Below the pieces are notes generated by a model. It was not told the origin of the DNA. It was given only the letters and a program-made list of their open reading frames with translations, and made no database searches. Position numbers and translations under genes: made by a program. This document shows, in pieces, positions 8,892 to 16,941 of a stretch of 64,000 nucleotides of DNA. The stretch lies in the IMG/VR virus record IMGVR_UViG_3300027759_004177, positions 62,001 through 126,000 of that record. One strand, given 5' to 3'. Position 1 is the first letter of the stretch, and every line of letters starts with the position of its first letter.

Positions 8892-8908
8892 ATAATTATT
8901 TATCTTGT

Positions 8909-9871
8909 TTATTTCTTCACAATAGATTGCATGGTGTTGAAAACTTTTTGTTGATTTTCCAACAGCATTTCTCTTGTGCCACCAAATGGTGCTGATGCCA
9001 ATGGTCCTAATCTTTTTTGGATTTCTGGATCGCTAAAACCTTTGGCCAACACCAGATATAAATCTCTGACTATGTGGTCAGGTGTTCCGGCTGGTGCCCA
9101 AACTCCAAAAATCGAAGATAACACAAAATTTGGATGATTTTTATTCAACCACACGGCCTTGGTTGCTGGAGGATTGAATTTATTGGCCATGTCTACCCCT
9201 GCTGGGTCAAATGCTCCAATGATTTTTAATTTTCCTGCTTTGACATGTGATTCCGGAACAGAAATGCTGTCAACTGCTATTTTGACATGGCCTCCCAGCA
9301 CATCGGTCAACACTGGACCAGATCCTTTGTAAACTATAAAATTGGGTTCTGGTAGTTTTTCTAGTTCTGCCCATTTTTTGTAGATTGGGGCCATGATGGC
9401 ACTGAATATGCCAATGTCAAACTTTTTGGGGTTTTGTTTTGCCCATGCAACAAATTCTGCATAGTTGTTGAAAGGTGCATCAGCACTGGCATATAAAACC
9501 TGGATACTTGGCACCACTGGAAAAACTGGTACGACACTTTTTGCGGTGTAAGTGGCAGTGGAATCATTTACTAGTCCTGTGTTAAAACTGGCAGTGGCCA
9601 CTACCATGAGATTGTGCCCGTCGGGTTCGGCTTTGGCAAAGTGGTTCATGCCAATCACACCACCAGCACCAGCCATGTTGGTCGTCACTGATTTCCAACC
9701 GTGTTTTTCAAGTATTTCGCTGGTCAGCCGTGCAATAACATCGTTGCTACCGCCCACGGGCCATGGAGTCATGACATCAATGGTTTTGGTAGGTTTGAAA
9801 TTTTGAGCAGATGCTAGGCCGACTGTTAAACCCAGTATCAGAGCGGCAAAGATTTTTGTGATTTTTTTCAT
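8909..9871 (-). CDS. Bug/TctC tripartite tricarboxylate transporter substrate-binding protein
   Basis: signal peptide; PWPVGGSNDVIAR, N.AGAGGVIG, PDGHNL, YKGSGP..TDVLGG, APAGTP. Confidence 0.9.
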   Translation of the reverse strand: MKKITKIFAALILGLTVGLASAQNFKPTKTIDVMTPWPVGGSNDVIARLTSEILEKHGWKSVTTNMAGAGGVIGMNHFAKAEPDGHNLMVVATASFNTGLVNDSTATYTAKSVVPVFPVVPSIQVLYASADAPFNNYAEFVAWAKQNPKKFDIGIFSAIMAPIYKKWAELEKLPEPNFIVYKGSGPVLTDVLGGHVKIAVDSISVPESHVKAGKLKIIGAFDPAGVDMANKFNPPATKAVWLNKNHPNFVLSSIFGVWAPAGTPDHIVRDLYLVLAKGFSDPEIQKRLGPLASAPFGGTREMLLENQQKVFNTMQSIVKK

Positions 9872-10012
9872 AGAAAGATCCTTTGATTTAGAAAATGTGT
9901 AACTAGATATAAGTTTACACTGAGCTAATAAAAAATGCAAGTGGAAAAGCAGAACTTTGGTGAAGTTTCAGCGGAACTTTGCTGTAACTAATTTTATTTA
10001 GCTTTTGGCAAT

Positions 10013-10033
10013 AAAAAAGCCCCCGGAGGGGCT
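10013..10033 (-). terminator. terminator ending tmRNA transcript
   Basis: AGCCCC-tccg-GGGGCTTTTTT on minus strand. Confidence 0.8.
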
Positions 10034-10034
10034 G

Positions 10035-10350
10035 GTGGTTTCTGTTACGAGGTATTTCCTACCCTAGGCGCTGTTAGGCGGCCAATGCGAACTGTTCGTC
10101 GTTTGCGTTTACGTTGTTTGCTTTTTACGAGTACTCCTCTCGTGTTGCCATCTCTTCTAGCTCACCATGTCGAAACTGTTTCATCCCCATCAAAAAGGCT
10201 CTTGACAATCCAGAATAGATAGTTGGCAACAACTGCTATGCCCCAGAGATAAATCCAATGCCAGTCGTTAAACATAAAAGTCCTTTTGGTGGAGATGCTG
10301 GGTTCTGCCCCCAGGTCCACAGCGCCTTCGATTTGAAGGAATTACAACAA
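10035..10350 (-). ncRNA. ssrA: two-piece (circularly permuted) tmRNA; tag (A)ANDEQFALAA
   Basis: acceptor piece ends CUGGG-GGCAGAA-CCCAG-CAUCUCC-ACCA at 10287; coding piece starts GGGGAUG at 10188 (G3:U70 pair); tag frame 10106..10074; outer ends approximate. Confidence 0.92.
10162..10275 (-). CDS. putative 37-aa membrane peptide in the tmRNA intervening segment
   Basis: AAGGA SD; MFNDWHWIYLWGIAVVANYLFWIVKSLFDGDETVSTW. Confidence 0.45.
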   Translation of the reverse strand: MFNDWHWIYLWGIAVVANYLFWIVKSLFDGDETVSTW

Positions 10351-10369
10351 TATCGTTATTATATACTTA

Positions 10370-11167
10370 TTAAGTTTCTGCGTCAACCTTGGGTTTGGTA
10401 CGCCATTTTGCCAATTCGGATTCAAACTTTTGTTCTAGATCTGCGGTGATAACGGCCTGATCAACCTGTTGTCTTAGTTCATTAGCAAACGTTTCCAATT
10501 GGCCAATGTCGCCCATGTACTTGAACGTGTCTGTGACACGTCTAGTATCGTACGCATCCATGATTATGTGATAGCGGTCCTGATTTGAATCATTGCGAAT
10601 TTGATGCCAGACATTTACCCAAACCATGTAGGCCGTACCAGGTTCCATATACAACGTTTCTCCTTCGGCTGTGAAGGTACATGCAGGATTTGTAATCAGG
10701 GGTATGTGGATACGTGCCATATATTGGTTTTCACCACAATCTCTATGCACCAGACTCTTGCTACCAGCCTTCAGACAAGTTACCCTGGCTCGACGTGGTG
10801 TCAACCCAAATGCCTCAATTTGATCGATGGTCCGAGCAATCTCACCGCAATAGCCCTGTGTGGGTTTCTTGTATTCTAACGAATGTGCAATGTTAAAATA
10901 TTTCAAGGTAGTGTAATTGTTGGCATTTTTAGGAAAGAATACTTCTTCGATAGTGGTGCCTTCTTCGTTTTGAAAAAATTCCCAACCGTCTTGCCAGGCA
11001 CCAGTTTGACTCTGCAAACTCCATCCGCCAAATCCTTTATAGGCATCGGTTTCATATTCTTCGCCTTGCACGACTTGATTGCCCAAAGTAAACACATGAT
11101 TTTTTACATCGGCTACTAACCGGTCATGATCGTATTTGATAAAATTTAATTTTTCATAGAATGACAT
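10370..11167 (-). CDS. aspartyl/asparaginyl beta-hydroxylase-like Fe/2OG oxygenase
   Basis: VHRD...RIHIPLITN...WHQIRNDS..DRYHII. Confidence 0.8.
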   Translation of the reverse strand: MSFYEKLNFIKYDHDRLVADVKNHVFTLGNQVVQGEEYETDAYKGFGGWSLQSQTGAWQDGWEFFQNEEGTTIEEVFFPKNANNYTTLKYFNIAHSLEYKKPTQGYCGEIARTIDQIEAFGLTPRRARVTCLKAGSKSLVHRDCGENQYMARIHIPLITNPACTFTAEGETLYMEPGTAYMVWVNVWHQIRNDSNQDRYHIIMDAYDTRRVTDTFKYMGDIGQLETFANELRQQVDQAVITADLEQKFESELAKWRTKPKVDAET

Positions 11168-11176
11168 CGTACATCC

Positions 11177-11776
11177 TTATAGTGTATTTTTAAATGCTTG
11201 AGCAGCACTTTTATCAAATGTGCCCATGTTACTGGTTACGGATATCCTGGCCTGGCTGGAACAATTGGGTTCTACCATGTGTAATACAAACCCTGGAAAG
11301 AATACCAGTTTACCTTCTGCAGGCTGAATGCGACTAAACTTTGTGCCGTTAACGCCATCATTTCCTGAATCCCAGTCGCATCCATTGCGAGGATCTATTA
11401 GCAATAAGTCACCACAGTTTTCAGGAGCCTTAACATAATAGGTCATTGCAATCTTGGGGCTACCATGTCCATGTATGGGCATACCTTGACCAGGTCGGTG
11501 ATAGTTTATCCAGCCACGAGCATGCCAGAATTCAAATTCCTTGACAGTTGGTGCTATGTAATCGTATGTCTGTGCTTTGACTATTTTGATAGTGTAGTTT
11601 TTTAGTTCTTGTACTCGGGGACTATCGCAGTTCCAAATATTAGAGTTGCCAGCGTCGGCTTCAGGATCACAATATTGGCCAATTTCGTCAAGTAGTTCGT
11701 TGTTGAATTGTTCGTCAAAGTCGGTTTGTATTTCCCACACAGGGGTCACCCACATGTCTGTTTTAGTTATTTTCAT
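11177..11776 (-). CDS. putative 2OG-Fe(II) oxygenase (TIGR02466-like)
   Basis: WINYH...HGH...YYV...DPR...EGKLVFFP..LHMV.PN...RISV. Confidence 0.85.
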   Translation of the reverse strand: MKITKTDMWVTPVWEIQTDFDEQFNNELLDEIGQYCDPEADAGNSNIWNCDSPRVQELKNYTIKIVKAQTYDYIAPTVKEFEFWHARGWINYHRPGQGMPIHGHGSPKIAMTYYVKAPENCGDLLLIDPRNGCDWDSGNDGVNGTKFSRIQPAEGKLVFFPGFVLHMVEPNCSSQARISVTSNMGTFDKSAAQAFKNTL

Positions 11777-12471
11777 TTGAATTGAACCAAGTTGAGTCGA
11801 TTTAAAATCTGCAGATAGTAGAATCCCAAATCAAATTCATTTTTATTTACAGCCATGTTACACAGCCTGCTGTCTCTATGGTGATTGTTGTGTAGTTCTT
11901 CACCAACACACAGTATGCCTACAGGAACAACATTACGAGTATAGTCGCCTAGGTCAAAATTTTTGTAACCGATGCTATGACCAAATACTGTTATTGTTGC
12001 GATTGTTAAAAAATTTACCACAAACAAATGTACAATCCATACGAGAATTCCCAACCAACCAAACAACAGCATGTTGATTAACAATAACAATACAACTCCC
12101 AGTCTTGGATGCCGATCAATAACGGTGTCGGTAGATGCTTCCGCACAGTATCTATGATATTCTTGATCAGAAACTGTTATTTTATACGATCGAAAGAAAC
12201 TTGGAACTAGACAGCACCGCAACAAAGACCAAAAACCAAATCTAGGAGTATGAGGATCATTGTATGAATCCGAGAACTCGTGATGCTTTCTATGTTGTAC
12301 CACAAACTCTCGAGTAACCACATCAAACAAGATCCAATACATGATCTTCATTGCGGTTTCTACTCGCGGAGTCAGGTTGTATTGTCTGTGTATCATATAT
12401 CGATGCATGTACAGGGAAGCCAGCACACAGCCCAGGTGTATGGTCACAATGGTATAGATCAACATCAACAT
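11773..12471 (-). CDS. membrane fatty acid desaturase (delta-9 type)
   Basis: His boxes HRYMIH, HRKHH, HNNHH; TM segments. Confidence 0.85.
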   Translation of the reverse strand: MLMLIYTIVTIHLGCVLASLYMHRYMIHRQYNLTPRVETAMKIMYWILFDVVTREFVVQHRKHHEFSDSYNDPHTPRFGFWSLLRCCLVPSFFRSYKITVSDQEYHRYCAEASTDTVIDRHPRLGVVLLLLINMLLFGWLGILVWIVHLFVVNFLTIATITVFGHSIGYKNFDLGDYTRNVVPVGILCVGEELHNNHHRDSRLCNMAVNKNEFDLGFYYLQILNRLNLVQFK

Positions 12472-12992
12472 AGATTCAATATTTCTAAAACTTGATCATA
12501 CCCTAAATCGTTGGCAGAAACTTGTAAAAACTTTCTTGGCAAACAATTTGTAGAATCAACTCCATGGATGACCTTGCCGTTTAAAATGTACACATCTCCT
12601 GGATAGGCAACAAAACTATCTATTGGTTCTAATTCTTCTATGCGATATGCATGTCCATCACCGTGATCTGCGTAGGTAAACTTTGAAGCATTTTCCGTGC
12701 TTTTGTAAAATGTGGTTCGGTAGTCACCTGTTTCTATGTAGAAATTAATATTGACTTGGTCAACAATATCTGTATGTGGCGGCACTGAGGTTTCTATGTT
12801 AACAAAACTTGTGTAAAAATGTCGACTGTATTCACCAAGTGAAGCGATAAAACGGTCTACGTAATTGGAAGTGACATTAAAGTACTGTATTTTGTTGCCA
12901 TGCGTATCTAATTCAAATTCTATCCGTTTATCTAGAATTTCAAAATCAATGTCGGCAGACGCAGAAAGTTTTTTAAATCGAGAATGAACCAT
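12465..12992 (-). CDS. putative Fe/2OG-oxygenase-like protein
   Basis: PPHTD...INFY...IHGV; start uncertain (12992 or 13022). Confidence 0.6.
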   Translation of the reverse strand: MVHSRFKKLSASADIDFEILDKRIEFELDTHGNKIQYFNVTSNYVDRFIASLGEYSRHFYTSFVNIETSVPPHTDIVDQVNINFYIETGDYRTTFYKSTENASKFTYADHGDGHAYRIEELEPIDSFVAYPGDVYILNGKVIHGVDSTNCLPRKFLQVSANDLGYDQVLEILNLC

Positions 12993-13539
12993 ATTGTCGT
13001 AAAGATTCGTATACTGTTTCATAAGAAAGATCTGTAGTAAACGACAGGGCTTCTCTGTAGTTGGTTTTACTGAGTCCTTCTACGCTGTGTATCTTGCGAA
13101 TATTTAAAAGATATATGTCATGCTTGCGGGCCACAAATTGATCTTCTAACGCCAGATTATCGAGTTTGTAACTGCACTGACATTCTCCAGCACAAAACTT
13201 CTCTACTGTACACTCTGCACATGAAACTGGTTTGGGCTTGGTAAACTCTTCAGACTTTACAGAGAAGAACCGAGTCGGGCAGTTGTTTTCGCTCAGGTAT
13301 ATGTTTATTCTACAACCTATGTCTAGATCCACATGTGGATGTGCATTGTCACCAATGAATGTCATGTAGCTGAGATTAAAATTCTGCTTCAAGTGATCTG
13401 GCAACAGGATATTTCTGCTCAGGTTGGTACGGTAGTATCTGGTCCATCCGCCACCGCAAACGTGTTGTTCGCCCAGGTTTTCAAAGTTGTTGTACAGGCT
13501 TGGACTAATACTATCTAACTTAGTATAGTACCGATTCAT
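12973..13539 (-). CDS. putative Fe/2OG-oxygenase-like protein with Cys-rich insert
   Basis: HPHVD...INIY...IHSV...R; CAEC...CAGECQC insert. Confidence 0.6.
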   Translation of the reverse strand: MNRYYTKLDSISPSLYNNFENLGEQHVCGGGWTRYYRTNLSRNILLPDHLKQNFNLSYMTFIGDNAHPHVDLDIGCRINIYLSENNCPTRFFSVKSEEFTKPKPVSCAECTVEKFCAGECQCSYKLDNLALEDQFVARKHDIYLLNIRKIHSVEGLSKTNYREALSFTTDLSYETVYESLRQYGSFSI

Positions 13540-13934
13540 AGACGTGATTGGAACTCCACCATGGGTGTGGTATCTATGCCTTCTGCCACTACCTGGTCCA
13601 CAGGCTCGGGTATGTTGCGTGCCTGGGCCCACTCTCGGTATTGTGCCACGATAGGACTGGGAGTGTAGTCTATTCCGTCATGCGGATTCTTTAGTGCGTC
13701 ATAAAATTCGTTGCCATACACGATGTAGTTTATCAAAGGATCGCCGGGTAGCAAAAACACTTTGTCTAATATGACCGGGTATTGGTGACACATCTCAAAG
13801 AAACTGTTTCGTTCATCCTCAGTGAGATTGAACACAATGGCGCCAACTTCGGTGTCTAAAAAATACTTGACATACCGGTTGTAATCTTCAGCATCAAAGT
13901 TAACTGGTTGTTTGCCTACAATAATATCGCTCAT
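13536..13934 (-). CDS. hypothetical protein
   Basis: ATGA overlaps on both sides in operon. Confidence 0.75.
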   Translation of the reverse strand: MSDIIVGKQPVNFDAEDYNRYVKYFLDTEVGAIVFNLTEDERNSFFEMCHQYPVILDKVFLLPGDPLINYIVYGNEFYDALKNPHDGIDYTPSPIVAQYREWAQARNIPEPVDQVVAEGIDTTPMVEFQSRL

Positions 13935-14569
13935 AAGTCCTTAATCCTTAACATACTGTTTATAAAACTTTTCAACACCAACCGATCTTTGCTGTCCTTG
14001 GTAAGGTCATGTTTAAAATCTGTAGTCAGGTTTACTCTACATCTCCCCAGGTTCATCTTGACTCCGTGTAGTACATATGATGGCAAAAATATCATGTCGC
14101 CATTTTTAGGGGTTATTGTTTTAATTTCAGTTCGGTGTTCACCGACTCGGCCGGTATCAACATAATAAAATTCACCACCAACATCTGGGCCCTGTATGTA
14201 GTAGCTACAGGCAATAGACGAATCAGGGTGTGCATGGAGTTCTATACGTTCTCCAGCTGTGTTTACATTAAGCCAGGCTCCCGACACAACAAATTCAGCT
14301 CGTTGTGTTGTTGGCATGTATTGATTGACAACCTCAGTGATTACCTCGGTCTTAAAATCAATCAATTCTTGTATACAGGGACTATCATAATCTAATAGAG
14401 ATTCTTTCCCTGAGGCTTCGTCAAACGTGCTGGCAATTTCGTAAAGTTCTCGTAACAACTCTTGATTAAATGATTCTGTAAACGGAGTCTTTTGGTGCCA
14501 CACCGGGCACTCCCACAACGAAGATTTCACACTACTGGCGAAAATACTTTCGTCAATGACCGTGGTCAT
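13931..14569 (-). CDS. putative 2OG-Fe(II) oxygenase (TIGR02466-like)
   Basis: WLNV...HAHP...YY...GDMIFLPSYVLHGV..N...R. Confidence 0.85.
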   Translation of the reverse strand: MTTVIDESIFASSVKSSLWECPVWHQKTPFTESFNQELLRELYEIASTFDEASGKESLLDYDSPCIQELIDFKTEVITEVVNQYMPTTQRAEFVVSGAWLNVNTAGERIELHAHPDSSIACSYYIQGPDVGGEFYYVDTGRVGEHRTEIKTITPKNGDMIFLPSYVLHGVKMNLGRCRVNLTTDFKHDLTKDSKDRLVLKSFINSMLRIKDL

Positions 14570-15474
14570 TTTGCAGCCCTTTGTCCCACACGTTTAAAAC
14601 CAAAGCCTTTAAAGAACGAATAGATTCCAGCACCCGCCAAGGAGGTGTAATAGCTTAGATAAAACAACGCCCACATGGTGTACAAGGTTGGCAAACGATG
14701 GCGGCGTGACTTTTTGCCAACACGTGGCAAGCTGTCAACAAATCGACAAATAGGTTTACCAATCTCCATCAAGATACGACCTTGAACATTGTCTTCGGGC
14801 AATGCACCCATCAAGTAGGCCATGTGTTCTGACCATGGCGTACCAATCTTGATGGCCATGTCCGTGATACGATCTTTTTGTCGTGCCGCACGTTTTTCTG
14901 GGTCAGTGATCCAGGGCATGTACACCGGTCCTTTGCCGTCCATCCAGGCAGTTACAATTCTTGCCCAACGCACATAGCCGCGATACACTCGGCGATCTTT
15001 TTTGCGTAGCCATTGCCCGTACATTTGATCCGCGGCCCAGATGTTTTGATTCATTAGACCAAAGTCGTATAACTTGGCACAAATAATCTTGGAGCAGTTG
15101 CAGGCACAGTTACAGGCATAAGATGTGGTTGTACTGGTACAGTTATATGTGCAGGCACAGTTACAGTTGTTCTGTAACCAACTCTGTGTGTCACAGTTGC
15201 CACAATTGATTTGACCAGTTATGAGACAATTTGTGCAATTTATGTTACCGCAGTTGCAATTTGCAGTACAGTTACCATTGGCACAGTTGGCGCCATCGGC
15301 AGTATTTTGGAAATAGGCTTTGTTATAAAATGCCGTCATACTGGGATTGGCCGGACGCTGGTCGCTACGAATTAATCCATTGAGGAAATTTAAATCTGTA
15401 GAGAAAGTGGCAGCCTGCCCAATTTCGGTGCTGACGTCGCCAACTGCAATTTGTCCGGATGCTGGTAGTGTCAT
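14566..15474 (-). CDS. Asn-Cys repeat protein: tail-tip-type N-terminus, NC-rich core, KIIC domain, C-terminal TM
   Basis: MTLPASGQIAVGDVSTEIG...SMTAFYNK; 16 Cys in aa 64-127, 13 as NC; hydrophobic then basic C-terminus. Confidence 0.8.
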   Translation of the reverse strand: MTLPASGQIAVGDVSTEIGQAATFSTDLNFLNGLIRSDQRPANPSMTAFYNKAYFQNTADGANCANGNCTANCNCGNINCTNCLITGQINCGNCDTQSWLQNNCNCACTYNCTSTTTSYACNCACNCSKIICAKLYDFGLMNQNIWAADQMYGQWLRKKDRRVYRGYVRWARIVTAWMDGKGPVYMPWITDPEKRAARQKDRITDMAIKIGTPWSEHMAYLMGALPEDNVQGRILMEIGKPICRFVDSLPRVGKKSRRHRLPTLYTMWALFYLSYYTSLAGAGIYSFFKGFGFKRVGQRAAK

Positions 15475-15486
15475 GGTAAATTCTCT

Positions 15487-16941
15487 TTATTGAGTATTTA
15501 TGACTGATTCCACCCGACTTTGACCATACACTTCAATTCCTTCGATCTCGCCAACTACTTCACTGACAATTTTGATAGGTATGACTCGTTTCTTTTCAGT
15601 TTCTGTGTGTTCATATATGGTACCAAACACGTCTTGCCGTTCCAAGGGCAACTCGTCCTGTTTGATCAGGGTGGGAATATAACCCGTTATTTTCTCTACA
15701 GCCAGGGCAAACAAGGCCACATTGTCCGAATAGCTGTTGGCACAGCTGACATCCCAGAATTCTTTGTCCAAGAACATGCAGGCACCTTTGCAAAGGTGTA
15801 GTACCGGGCACTTGGGACATTCAGCACGATTTGACCAGTGTGTTGATGTTTTGATAGCCACGTTGTCATAATCGTCTAAATTACCGCCCAAATGGCTTTC
15901 TCCGTTTTTGCCGGTTTCTAGACTGCTGACGTTTTGACAAGTCATCACATTACCACGCAGGTCGATTGCCAACACATGCTCGTCGTCCATGCCGCACTTT
16001 TGTCCTAAGAATTTGGATTCGTCGTGCGCCAGCACGTTTCTAATGAATCCATCGATCTTGTCCAACTGCATCTTGAATCCAATTTGTCCTTGTGTACTAA
16101 AAATATCAGCAAAGGCTGTGCGACGAAATTCAAAATGTTGCTGTTTGGTTTGCAGGCTGTTTTGCATGCCATCAGCATCGTAACTGTCTACAATGCCGCC
16201 TTCGCCCAGAGACACATTGGGGTCTCCTGTGAATTCCACAAACCAGTCATAAATCCGTTTTCTGCTGATGTTTTGTGCATTGAGCATGGGATTAAAGCTA
16301 AAGCCTTTTTTGAGTCTGCTCATCTGACGATAAAATCCCAGGATCTGTTTTTTCTTTTCGGGATCCGCAAACGGATCAGGTCCACGCACATGTTGTCCAG
16401 GACCATCGTGGCTGATTGATACTGTAAAGTTCAATTTCATTAGCCAATCAATTATTTCCTCATTGAGTATGCTGCCATTGGTAATCACACTGAACTGTGG
16501 TTTATGTTTCCAGCCACTAAATTTTTCCAAGATAGCTTCAGCCAAAGGTTTGAGTGTTTTCCAGTAAACAAATGGTTCTCCACCCCAGAACTCAATCTTG
16601 AGGCCTTGGGTTTCATCAAACTCTAGCACTTTGAATTTTTCTAAAAAAACGTCAATGTCTTTCTTTGAAGTTTCTGGAGCACGTTCCACGAACTTCTGTG
16701 AGCAGTAATCGCAAGAGTAATTACAGCTGAGTCCCAACTGTATCTTTAATAGCTGTATCGCACGGCTTTTCTTCAATGGACGATCGCGATCAAAAGCAAC
16801 ATATGGCTTCAAATTGTGTTTGTGTATCTGTGGATATTCAAATACCGTACCATCCTCACTTTTTAAAGTGTTGGTTTCGTTATCGTAATAAAAGATTTTT
16901 TTGTCTGCGGCTGAACGCTCAGCATGAATTTCAAATAGCAT
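15487..16941 (-). CDS. radical SAM/SPASM-domain maturase
   Basis: CNYSCDYC, FWGGEP, ITNG, SISHDG, CG...G.V..C and CPKCPVLHLCKGAC...C SPASM cysteines. Confidence 0.92.
   Translation of the reverse strand: MLFEIHAERSAADKKIFYYDNETNTLKSEDGTVFEYPQIHKHNLKPYVAFDRDRPLKKSRAIQLLKIQLGLSCNYSCDYCSQKFVERAPETSKKDIDVFLEKFKVLEFDETQGLKIEFWGGEPFVYWKTLKPLAEAILEKFSGWKHKPQFSVITNGSILNEEIIDWLMKLNFTVSISHDGPGQHVRGPDPFADPEKKKQILGFYRQMSRLKKGFSFNPMLNAQNISRKRIYDWFVEFTGDPNVSLGEGGIVDSYDADGMQNSLQTKQQHFEFRRTAFADIFSTQGQIGFKMQLDKIDGFIRNVLAHDESKFLGQKCGMDDEHVLAIDLRGNVMTCQNVSSLETGKNGESHLGGNLDDYDNVAIKTSTHWSNRAECPKCPVLHLCKGACMFLDKEFWDVSCANSYSDNVALFALAVEKITGYIPTLIKQDELPLERQDVFGTIYEHTETEKKRVIPIKIVSEVVGEIEGIEVYGQSRVESVINTQ

What the first reader, a model, noticed from the sequence alone, without database searches (positions are those of the whole stretch)
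10162..10286. Small membrane-peptide ORF inside the tmRNA intervening segment
Seen: immediately after the CCA end lies AAGGA-7nt-ATG and a 37-codon Trp-rich hydrophobic ORF that reads into the first 27 nt of the coding piece. The SD region (AAAAGG) can pair with CCUUUU at the other end of the spacer. Inference: a dual-function RNA in which translation of the precursor competes with RNase P maturation.
Basis: partly seen in the sequence, partly recalled or inferred. Interest (0 to 1): 0.68.

Follow-up and report, generated by a model that had tools for sequence, protein, structure and literature searches.

The report
Micro-protein gene inside phage tmRNA spacer
The spacer that is cut out of this jumbo phage's two-piece tmRNA carries a small, evolutionarily conserved protein-coding gene, and many related phages use the same spacer as an exchangeable slot for different tiny proteins, which I did not find described in the papers searched.

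Summary
On the minus strand lies a beta-type two-piece tmRNA: acceptor piece 10349-10287, 98-nt spacer 10286-10189, coding piece from 10188. AAGGA sits one base after CCA. ATG follows 5 nt later (not 7) and opens a 37-codon frame ending 27 nt inside the coding piece.

One such frame is not beyond chance. Its relatives decide the matter:
- About 25 distinct homologues in freshwater phage tmRNA spacers keep the frame open.
- dN/dS is 0.25-0.30 in that frame and 0.5-1.1 in the other two.
- The spacer is more conserved than the mature tmRNA.
- Twice the same peptide gene lies outside the spacer, just upstream of the tmRNA.

The SD is the 5' strand of a covarying precursor stem whose 3' strand is the last codons.

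The pattern is general. Of 66 phage spacers with AAGG after CCA, 64 carry an SD-ATG frame that fills the spacer. They fall into 16 peptide families, 12 of them hydrophobic. Phages with near-identical flanks carry unrelated cassettes.

Best reading: a real micro-protein gene, probably a single-pass membrane helix, translated from the tmRNA precursor and shut off by folding and processing. Competition with RNase P is untested. Translation was not observed. I rate it a new variant of a known kind.

The parts
10358..10386 (-). Sigma-70-type promoter of the tmRNA unit (TTGACG, 17 nt, TATAAT)
   Evidence: 11 of 12 consensus matches. It lies where the Rfam beta_tmRNA model has its own promoter-like 5' part.
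10287..10349 (-). Acceptor piece of the two-piece tmRNA, ending in an encoded CCA (10289-10287)
   Evidence: The Rfam tmRNA_permuted match starts at 10349. Sequence read.
10189..10286 (-). Intervening segment (98 nt) between CCA and G1. It consists wholly of an SD plus codons 1-29 of the ORF.
   Evidence: Its mean identity among 13 relatives is 0.81, against 0.74 for the acceptor piece and 0.63 for the coding piece.
10281..10285 (-). Shine-Dalgarno AAGGA, 5 nt before the ATG
   Evidence: AAGG at this place goes with a spacer-filling ORF in 64 of 66 unique phage spacers, against 1.95 +/- 1.3 in shuffles.
10162..10275 (-). 37-codon ORF plus TGA. Codons 1-29 (10275-10189) are the conserved core. 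Codons 30-37 and the stop (10188-10162) are read from the 5' end of the coding piece and are not conserved.
   Evidence: dN/dS is 0.25-0.30 in this frame only. AlphaFold2 gives one helix over residues 2-29.
10276..10286 (-). 5' strand of the precursor closing stem. It contains the SD and runs up to the ATG.
   Evidence: MFE folds of 18 family members. Covariation in 135 unique spacers.
10193..10203 (-). 3' strand of the closing stem, which is also codons 25-28 (K S L F) of the ORF
   Evidence: Predicted unpaired probability of the SD falls from about 0.5 to 0.2, and of the SD-ATG spacer from 0.8 to 0.08, once this strand is transcribed.
10034..10188 (-). Coding piece of the tmRNA, with the tag frame ANDEQFALAA plus TAA at 10106-10074
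   Evidence: Rfam and ARAGORN. Metatranscriptome contigs cover 10041-10123.
10012..10033 (-). Intrinsic terminator (6-bp GC-rich stem 10033-10018, then a T run)
   Evidence: This is the end of the Rfam beta_tmRNA match.

Best explanation
The spacer of this phage's two-piece tmRNA gene is a real protein-coding cassette. It encodes a micro-protein of about 29 residues: a Trp/Tyr-rich start followed by one helix with invariant Gly12 and Asn18, most likely a single-pass membrane peptide that acts in trans.

The peptide would be made from the tmRNA primary transcript, which runs from its own promoter to its own terminator. The SD is the 5' strand of the conserved helix that extends the acceptor stem in the precursor. 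The 3' strand of that helix is the last four core codons.

Shown here:
- the anatomy of the locus;
- coding-type constraint on the frame;
- the covarying closing stem;
- the gene's independence from the spacer position;
- cassette exchange between phages.

Inferred:
- Ribosomes load mainly on the nascent RNA, during the roughly 85 nt before the anti-SD strand is transcribed.
- Folding and then processing (RNase P at G1, 3' trimming to CCA) end translation. Little peptide is therefore made per tmRNA transcript.
- RNase P cleavage would leave this ORF without a stop codon.

The eight tail residues read from the tmRNA body are incidental. The peptide's target is unknown. The fast cassette turnover suggests an accessory role in phage-host or phage-phage conflict at the membrane.
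For: 1. Coding constraint. About 25 distinct homologues were found. In the 21 analysed, the frame is open in all 21 and both other frames carry stops in all 21. Pooled dN/dS is 0.30 (frame 0) against 0.61 and 1.04. For codons 14-29, which lie outside the search pattern, it is 0.25 against 0.53 and 1.13. For the four sequences found through the tmRNA alone it is 0.25 against 0.61 and 1.02. Eight residues are invariant.
2. The spacer is more conserved than the mature coding piece in 78 of 78 pairs.
3. The same peptide gene, with its own stop, lies just upstream of the acceptor piece in L127 and L522. In both, other ORFs fill the spacer.
4. AAGG after CCA goes with ATG and a spacer-filling frame in 64 of 66 unique spacers, against 1.95 in shuffles. 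These form 16 peptide clusters. Two other clusters give dN/dS of 0.11-0.27 in frame only. One spacer class encodes a Pfam Oxidored-like domain at 37 bits.
5. Closing stem: positions +2..+10 are paired in 87-100% of 135 spacers, with up to 6 pair types per position.
6. One promoter and one terminator bound the unit.
7. AlphaFold2 gives a single helix over residues 2-29, with block-mean pLDDT 80-93 over residues 1-30 and 54 over the last seven.
8. Cassette swap: L162 and L175 have flanks identical at 399/400 and 500/500 bases, yet their spacers are unrelated.
Against: - There is no evidence of translation. The three metatranscriptomes that hold the locus give contigs over the tag region and acceptor piece but essentially none over 10132-10285. 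Contigs cannot prove absence.
- The window peptide's hydropathy (KD15 1.87-1.91) is reached by 13% of stop-free shuffles of the same composition.
- No Pfam family and no informative PHROG or Atlas match was found.
- High conservation of the spacer could partly reflect recent horizontal spread of the cassette rather than selection.
- The dN/dS values are pooled over non-independent pairs.
- The kinetic-gating step rests on thermodynamic folding only, and in this sequence the AUG itself stays unpaired.
Confidence: 0.7

Rival explanations
1. Cis-acting leader ORF. What matters is the act of translating the spacer, not the peptide. Ribosomes on the spacer keep the acceptor stem and closing stem open and so time or compete with RNase P maturation of the tmRNA.
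For: The SD and the last codons form the precursor stem. The ORF runs to or across the RNase P site in every family: 12 of 16 clusters stop at the TGA of TGAT|GGG, binomial p 8e-4. Ribosome occupancy and the folded precursor are therefore mutually exclusive.
Against: The peptide sequence is conserved with frame-specific dN/dS of about 0.25. The gene keeps its sequence when moved upstream of the acceptor piece (L127, L522). Near-identical tmRNA genes carry unrelated ORFs or an ORF-less hairpin. About half of the related phage spacers sampled (68 of 135) and the bacterial relatives have no ORF and presumably still mature.
Confidence: 0.12
2. Selfish or neutral mobile cassette. The spacer insert spreads between phage tmRNA genes by recombination through the conserved flanks. 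It is tolerated because it is cut out of the RNA, and its ORF gives the phage no benefit, as has been argued for the IVS of 23S rRNA.
For: Spacer classes are scattered over the tree of mature tmRNA parts. The W class needs at least 11 changes on well-supported branches. There are clean cassette replacements. The spacer is more alike than its flanks.
Against: A 98-nt insert encodes no mobility enzyme. Frame-specific purifying selection on the amino-acid sequence in several families implies the product matters to something. The gene is retained in the tmRNA unit even when displaced from the spacer.
Confidence: 0.1
3. No gene at all: a chance open frame in a T-rich structured spacer, with conservation caused by RNA structure.
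For: Open frames that span the spacer occur in 12% of shuffled spacers. T-rich composition readily yields hydrophobic translations. No RNA contig covers the ORF.
Against: The substitution pattern is frame-specific, the frame is open in 21 of 21 and both other frames are closed in 21 of 21. SD and ORF are linked in 64 of 66 spacers. The interior of the spacer has no conserved pairing beyond position +12, yet it is conserved as protein. A standalone copy has its own stop codon.
Confidence: 0.04

Closest known systems
Intervening sequences of bacterial 23S rRNA that carry an ORF (S23p; Leptospira, Coxiella; PMC4990558)
   Same: An insert in a stable-RNA gene, closed by a stem. It is cut out without religation, so the mature RNA is in pieces. 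It is horizontally acquired and holds an ORF.
   Different: There the ORF is about 120 aa of one family, excision is by RNase III, and in Coxiella the protein appears not to be made and is decaying. Here the host RNA is a phage tmRNA and the insert is only SD plus ORF. At least 16 unrelated cargo families occupy the slot and show purifying selection. The Pfam scan of this peptide found no family at all.
Dual-function RNAs that also encode small proteins (SgrS/SgrT, RNAIII/delta-haemolysin, SR1/SR1P; own knowledge)
   Same: One transcript has both an RNA function and a small ORF, often for a membrane or amphipathic peptide. RNA structure limits translation.
   Different: In those cases the same mature molecule does both jobs. 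Here the coding part is the segment removed during maturation, so the two functions end up on separate molecules.
Type I toxin mRNAs (hok, tisB) and the MS2 maturation gene (own knowledge)
   Same: A small hydrophobic ORF whose SD is closed by pairing with a distant downstream segment. Translation is possible only on nascent or rearranged RNA.
   Different: No antisense-RNA partner was found: no promoter-like site facing the ORF in 9800-10600. Toxicity is untested. The occluding helix here is the processing stem of a tmRNA precursor.
arfA mRNA (PMC10107115 abstract; own knowledge for the RNase III step)
   Same: A stem in the mRNA is cleaved so that the ORF loses its stop codon, and the product level is then set by trans-translation. 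Here RNase P cleavage at G1 would likewise leave the ORF without a stop.
   Different: This is purely inferential here. Most other cassette families keep a stop (the UGA of UGAU|G) one base before the cut. The peptide shows no similarity to ArfA.
Bacterial beta-type two-piece tmRNA genes
   Same: The same RNA family, the same AAAG...CTTTTGAT spacer frame (L378) and near-identical tags, ANDE[HRN]FA[IL]AA.
   Different: The three bacterial genes found have 25-44-nt hairpin spacers without SD or ORF. The phage spacers examined here are 70-132 nt, and about half of those sampled are coding cassettes.
Single-gene lysis (Sgl) peptides of ssRNA phages (PMC7693330)
   Same: Many unrelated, very short one-helix peptides that arise and turn over quickly in phage genomes and are missed by gene finders.
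   Different: Sgl genes are embedded out of frame in protein genes of RNA phages and cause lysis. No lysis role is shown or needed here, since this is a 357-kb dsDNA phage.

Membership tests
Two-piece (permuted) tmRNA, beta type | Covariance-model match above the curated cut-off | tested here: met
   RF01850 scores 144.5 bits (cut-off 84) and RF04321 133.7 bits (cut-off 47). All 15 related loci tested also match.
Two-piece (permuted) tmRNA, beta type | Acceptor piece with encoded CCA lies upstream of the coding piece; there is an alanine-type acceptor stem with G3-U and a tag frame ending in LAA plus stop | tested here: met
   CATCTCC-ACCA (10297-10287) pairs with GGGGATG (10188-10182), with G3 opposite U. 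ARAGORN gives the tag ANDEQFALAA.
Two-piece (permuted) tmRNA, beta type | The precursor is cut into two pieces and the spacer is removed | not testable with these tools
   RNA contigs lie on the tag region and acceptor piece and almost none on the spacer. That is compatible with removal, but contigs cannot show RNA ends.
Protein-coding micro-gene | SD at working distance from a start codon | tested here: met
   AAGGA, 5 nt, ATG. The same arrangement holds in every spacer-borne family member.
Protein-coding micro-gene | Frame kept open and purifying selection specific to that frame in homologues | tested here: met
   Open in 21 of 21 against 0 of 21 for the other frames. dN/dS is 0.25-0.30 against 0.5-1.1.
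Protein-coding micro-gene | Translation observed | not testable with these tools
   No ribosome profiling or proteomics was available. Metatranscriptome contigs do not cover the ORF.
Single-pass membrane micro-protein | Hydrophobic helix long enough to span a membrane | tested here: inconclusive
   AlphaFold2 gives a helix over residues 2-29. Kyte-Doolittle maxima for the window peptide are 1.87 (17-residue window) and 1.91 (15-residue window, near-identical L002 core), but 13% of stop-free shuffles reach the latter. Substitutions are apolar-for-apolar. Twelve of 16 cassette families are clearly hydrophobic.
Dual-function RNA (riboregulator plus mRNA) | RNA function and ORF lie on the same mature molecule | tested here: not met
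   Codons 1-29 lie wholly in the segment between CCA and G1, which is absent from mature two-piece tmRNA. They share only the primary transcript.
23S rRNA-type IVS with S23p ORF | ORF belongs to the S23p / 23S rRNA-IVS protein family | tested here: not met
   No Pfam family at E up to 1.
23S rRNA-type IVS with S23p ORF | Insert closed by a conserved stem at its base and patchy among close relatives | tested here: met
   Covarying 10-12-bp stem. Classes are scattered on the tmRNA tree, with clean swaps.
Type I toxin-antitoxin | Antisense RNA gene overlapping the toxin mRNA | tested here: not met
   The only plus-strand promoter-like site (10333-10362) points away from the ORF. This is a weak test based on consensus scanning only.
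ArfA-like non-stop control | Processing removes the stop codon of the ORF | tested here: inconclusive
   The stop (10164-10162) lies 24 nt past G1, so RNase P cleavage at G1 would remove it. The cleavage itself was not observed. Twelve of 16 other cassette clusters keep a UGA one base before G1.

The most novel reading that the evidence does not exclude
The spacer of phage two-piece tmRNA genes is a general, exchangeable expression slot for micro-proteins. The cargo is translated only from the nascent precursor. After RNase P cleavage the cargo mRNA ends at or before its stop codon, so the amount of peptide is set by trans-translation itself. That would be an ArfA-like feedback built into the tmRNA gene. 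The membrane peptides would be the phage's effectors in host takeover or superinfection exclusion.
Probability: 0.15. Interest if true: 0.9.

Novelty: new variant of a known kind. Interest (0 to 1): 0.78.

Why it matters
tmRNA genes are annotated as non-coding apart from the tag, and gene finders skip or mask them, so this coding layer has been invisible. The 2025 tmRNA database paper lists a tRNA and a repeat element as spacer oddities and mentions no ORF.

Three things would follow if translation is confirmed:
- It adds dozens of micro-protein families to phage biology, mostly one-helix membrane peptides. They sit at a fixed, easily recognised and fast-evolving locus, the kind of locus where conflict genes usually lie.
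- It offers a natural system for studying how translation and stable-RNA processing share one transcript.
- The 100-nt cassette with built-in SD, stop and flanking homology is a compact natural expression module.

It also ties a membrane peptide to the trans-translation unit, even when the peptide gene is displaced from the spacer. No current model of phage tmRNA function explains that link.

Tried and rejected
- blastn of the tmRNA region and tblastn of two cassette peptides against 50,697 deposited phage genomes found nothing. No cultured carrier is therefore known from these searches.
- The Pfam scan of the window peptide found nothing; PHROGs gave only a weak hit for the L127 copy (E 0.0045); the ESM Atlas gave no informative match.
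- A word-indexed protein search found 7 clusters, all 'hypothetical protein' where a source names them. The exhaustive HMM search found about 10 true members plus Trp-repeat noise.
- The peptide pattern found no match in 185,579 prokaryote genomes. The SD-spacer pattern gave 120 rows there, none tmRNA-like; that scan was truncated.
- ORF presence alone as evidence was rejected: 16 observed against 12.1 expected.
- Hydropathy alone as evidence for a membrane helix in this family was rejected.
- A 75-aa database protein that fuses the peptide to the tmRNA tag needs TAG read as Gln. It is a gene-caller artefact and was not used.
- Expression: 3 metatranscriptomes were laid on 8900-11200. There were no contigs over the ORF and no joints or ends, so the result is inconclusive.
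- SmpB was not found in the 357-kb phage genome.
- No complex prediction was run, because no binding claim is made.

Full report
WHAT IS THERE. The window is bases 62001-126000 of a 356,865-bp virus record rated complete. Neighbouring genes match phage families: ATP-dependent DNA ligase, a nuclease and a radical-SAM protein. There are also auxiliary-type genes: a TctC-like binding protein, an Asp/Asn hydroxylase, a 2OG oxygenase and a fatty-acid desaturase.

On the minus strand Rfam finds a beta-type two-piece tmRNA at 10400-10012. It scores 144.5 bits against a cut-off of 84, and the general permuted model scores 133.7 bits. ARAGORN reads the tag ANDEQFALAA. The unit has its own promoter (TTGACG-17-TATAAT, 10386-10358) and its own terminator (10033-10018).

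The acceptor piece ends with ACCA at 10290-10287. The coding piece starts with GGGGATG at 10188. Between them lie 98 nt.

THE OBSERVATION. It is correct. The frame has 37 codons with five Trp. Its TGA is at 10164-10162, so the last 27 nt are read from the coding piece.

The spacer therefore holds nothing except an SD and codons 1-29.

Taken alone this is not remarkable. Of 100 unique phage tmRNA spacers collected with a pattern that ignores SD and ORF, 16 have an ATG with a frame open to the boundary. Shuffles give 12.1 +/- 3.1.

RELATIVES SETTLE IT. I ran a tmRNA-only pattern, a pattern from the first 13 codons over viral contigs and metagenomes and an SD-spacer pattern. Together they gave about 25 distinct homologues of the peptide. 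All come from uncultured, mostly freshwater phage contigs, and the 15 loci submitted to Rfam (12 of them carrying the peptide) each hold a permuted tmRNA above the cut-off.
- In the 21 sequences analysed, the frame is open in all 21 and both other frames carry stops in all 21.
- Pooled Nei-Gojobori dN/dS is 0.30 in frame, against 0.61 and 1.04 out of frame.
- For codons 14-29, which the search pattern did not fix, it is 0.25 against 0.53 and 1.13.
- For the four sequences found through the tmRNA alone it is 0.25 against 0.61 and 1.02.
- M1, F2, W5, W7, Y9, G12, I13 and N18 are invariant.
- The spacer is more alike (mean identity 0.81) than the acceptor piece (0.74) or the coding piece (0.63). 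It beats the coding piece in 78 of 78 pairs. A segment that is thrown away should not behave so.

THE TAIL IS INCIDENTAL. One subfamily has a 98-nt spacer ending ...KSLFD and enters the tmRNA body in one frame. A second subfamily has an 89- or 80-nt spacer ending ...CIFM or ...VFM and enters in another frame. Total lengths run from 32 to 60 aa, according to where the tmRNA body happens to have a stop. AlphaFold2 with the 21-sequence alignment gives one helix over residues 2-29. Block-mean pLDDT is 80-93 over residues 1-30 and 54 over the last seven.

THE GENE DOES NOT NEED THE SPACER. In L127 the same peptide gene, with its own stop, sits 6 nt behind another ORF and about 30 nt upstream of the acceptor piece. 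The 380-nt spacer there holds two other ORFs of 62 and 60 aa, each preceded by TAAGGAAG. The second ends at the TGA of TGAT|GGG.

In L522 the gene again lies upstream of the acceptor piece, directly behind a TTGACA-17-TATAAT promoter. The spacer there holds a 59-aa ORF. So the peptide stays within the tmRNA transcription unit but acts independently of its position. This argues for a trans-acting product.

THE STEM. In every family member the acceptor stem continues into a helix that pairs spacer positions +1..+11 with -5..-15. This joins the SD and the stretch up to the ATG with the last core codons.

Across 135 unique phage spacers, with or without an ORF, positions +2..+10 are paired in 87-100%. 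Several pair types occur per position: +5/-9 shows G-U, C-G, G-C, U-A, A-U and U-G. Pairing falls to the shuffle level beyond +12. The helix is therefore a feature of the precursor, and the cassettes build their SD and their last codons out of it.

Predicted unpaired probability of the SD falls from about 0.5 to 0.2 once the 3' strand exists. For the SD-ATG spacer it falls from 0.8 to 0.08. The AUG stays open.

A GENERAL SLOT. Of 66 unique tmRNA-like phage spacers chosen only for AAGG at +2 and TGAT at the end, 64 have ATG 3-10 nt further on and a frame open to the boundary. Shuffles give 1.95 +/- 1.3 with a maximum of 6.
- The 64 fall into 16 peptide clusters at 50% identity, 12 of them with a clearly hydrophobic stretch.
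- Others include a Cys/His-rich 30-mer and an amphipathic 23-mer.
- Two further clusters (three length groups) give dN/dS of 0.11-0.27 in frame only.
- Twelve of 16 clusters stop exactly at the UGA of the conserved UGAU|G (binomial p 8e-4).
- Spacers of 102-132 nt hold longer, mostly soluble ORFs.
- One 109-nt class encodes a Pfam Oxidored-like domain (37 bits, cut-off 24).

The three bacterial beta-type genes found among 151 genomes of one order have 25-44-nt hairpin spacers with no ORF. One shares the AAAG...CTTTTGAT frame, and all three have almost the same tag.

CASSETTE EXCHANGE. On a tree of the mature tmRNA parts (133 rows) the spacer classes are scattered. This family needs at least 11 changes on well-supported branches.

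The clearest case is L162 against L175. Their flanks are identical at 399/400 bases upstream and 500/500 downstream, yet the spacers are unrelated (101 nt against 82 nt) and encode different peptides. L087 (an ORF-less hairpin) and L124 (this family) are identical at 154/155 bases upstream.

HOW IT MOST LIKELY WORKS. Shown: a selected coding cassette inside one promoter-terminator unit, with its ribosome-binding site forming one strand of the precursor's processing helix.

Inferred, by analogy with the MS2 maturation gene and hok-type mRNAs (own knowledge):
- Ribosomes load while the RNA is nascent.
- The helix then closes.
- RNase P at G1 and 3' trimming release the two tmRNA pieces.
- The spacer is lost.

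For this family, cleavage at G1 would leave a non-stop message, as in arfA (PMC10107115). This is untested.

It is not needed to explain the conservation, and the cassette swaps and the displaced copies argue against it as the main role.

WHAT IS NOT KNOWN. Translation and function were not observed. Metatranscriptome contigs from three runs cover the tag region and acceptor piece but not 10132-10285.

The window peptide's hydropathy is reached by 13% of stop-free shuffles, so 'membrane' is probable but not shown. No family match was found in Pfam, only a weak one in PHROGs, none in the Atlas, and none in deposited phage genomes.

LITERATURE. Full-text searches found no paper describing ORFs in tmRNA spacers. 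The 2025 tmRNA database paper mentions only a tRNA and a repeat element in spacers. The Melnitz phage paper discusses a two-piece tmRNA without mentioning a spacer ORF. The nearest precedent is the ORF-bearing IVS of 23S rRNA (PMC4990558). The library is incomplete, so priority cannot be asserted.

Noticed in passing
L127:6772-7315 and L522:1501-1937: In two relatives the Trp-rich peptide gene lies just upstream of the tmRNA acceptor piece. In L522 it sits about 7 nt behind a consensus -10 box, so the mRNA looks leaderless. The enlarged spacers (about 380 and 165 nt) hold other ORFs of 59-62 aa with TAAGGAAG in front.
   Followed up: partly
L162 vs L175; L087 vs L124: Phage contigs with identical or near-identical sequence on both sides of the tmRNA spacer carry unrelated spacer cassettes, or a cassette against a plain hairpin. 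The replacement is precise, within the conserved stem.
   Followed up: yes
L411:270-378 (also L434, L445, L451, L482, L503): A 109-115-nt spacer class encodes a Pfam Oxidored-like domain (CCGxGCxxCVW motif; 37 bits) but has no ATG, GTG or TTG behind its AAGG. The frame is open upstream through the acceptor piece to an ATG. How, or whether, it is translated is unexplained.
   Followed up: partly
L162:3416-3529 and six relatives (L157, L165, L206, L214, L221, L502): A non-hydrophobic spacer cassette encodes a 30-residue peptide with a CxxC...HxC pattern that looks like a zinc knuckle. dN/dS is 0.27 in frame. There is no Pfam match.
   Followed up: partly
L015, L158, L162 (tmRNA tag frames): Some related phage tmRNAs encode unusually long tags of 26-30 residues, whereas the window and bacterial beta-type tmRNAs have 10-residue tags.
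   Followed up: no
window 10162-10320 (-): The peptide frame stays open upstream through the T-arm of the acceptor piece to a GTG at 10320, giving a 52-aa ORF in the mechanical list. This is probably chance, but a gene caller could report this longer form.
   Followed up: no
whole phage genome (G000): No SmpB gene was found in the 357-kb phage, so its tmRNA would depend on the host's SmpB.
   Followed up: yes
window 8909-16941 (-): The tmRNA sits in a run of auxiliary-metabolism-like genes: a TctC-type solute-binding protein, an Asp/Asn beta-hydroxylase, a 2OG-Fe(II) oxygenase, a fatty-acid desaturase and a radical-SAM protein.
   Followed up: partly
L525:279-506: A database protein that joins the peptide to the tmRNA tag exists only if TAG is read as Gln. 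It is a gene-caller artefact on a 529-bp contig, not evidence for an alternative genetic code.
   Followed up: yes
window 10041-10123: Freshwater metatranscriptome contigs pile up on the tag region (summed depth up to about 680). Most continue into unlike sequence, so they come from many related tmRNAs and not only from this phage.
   Followed up: partly
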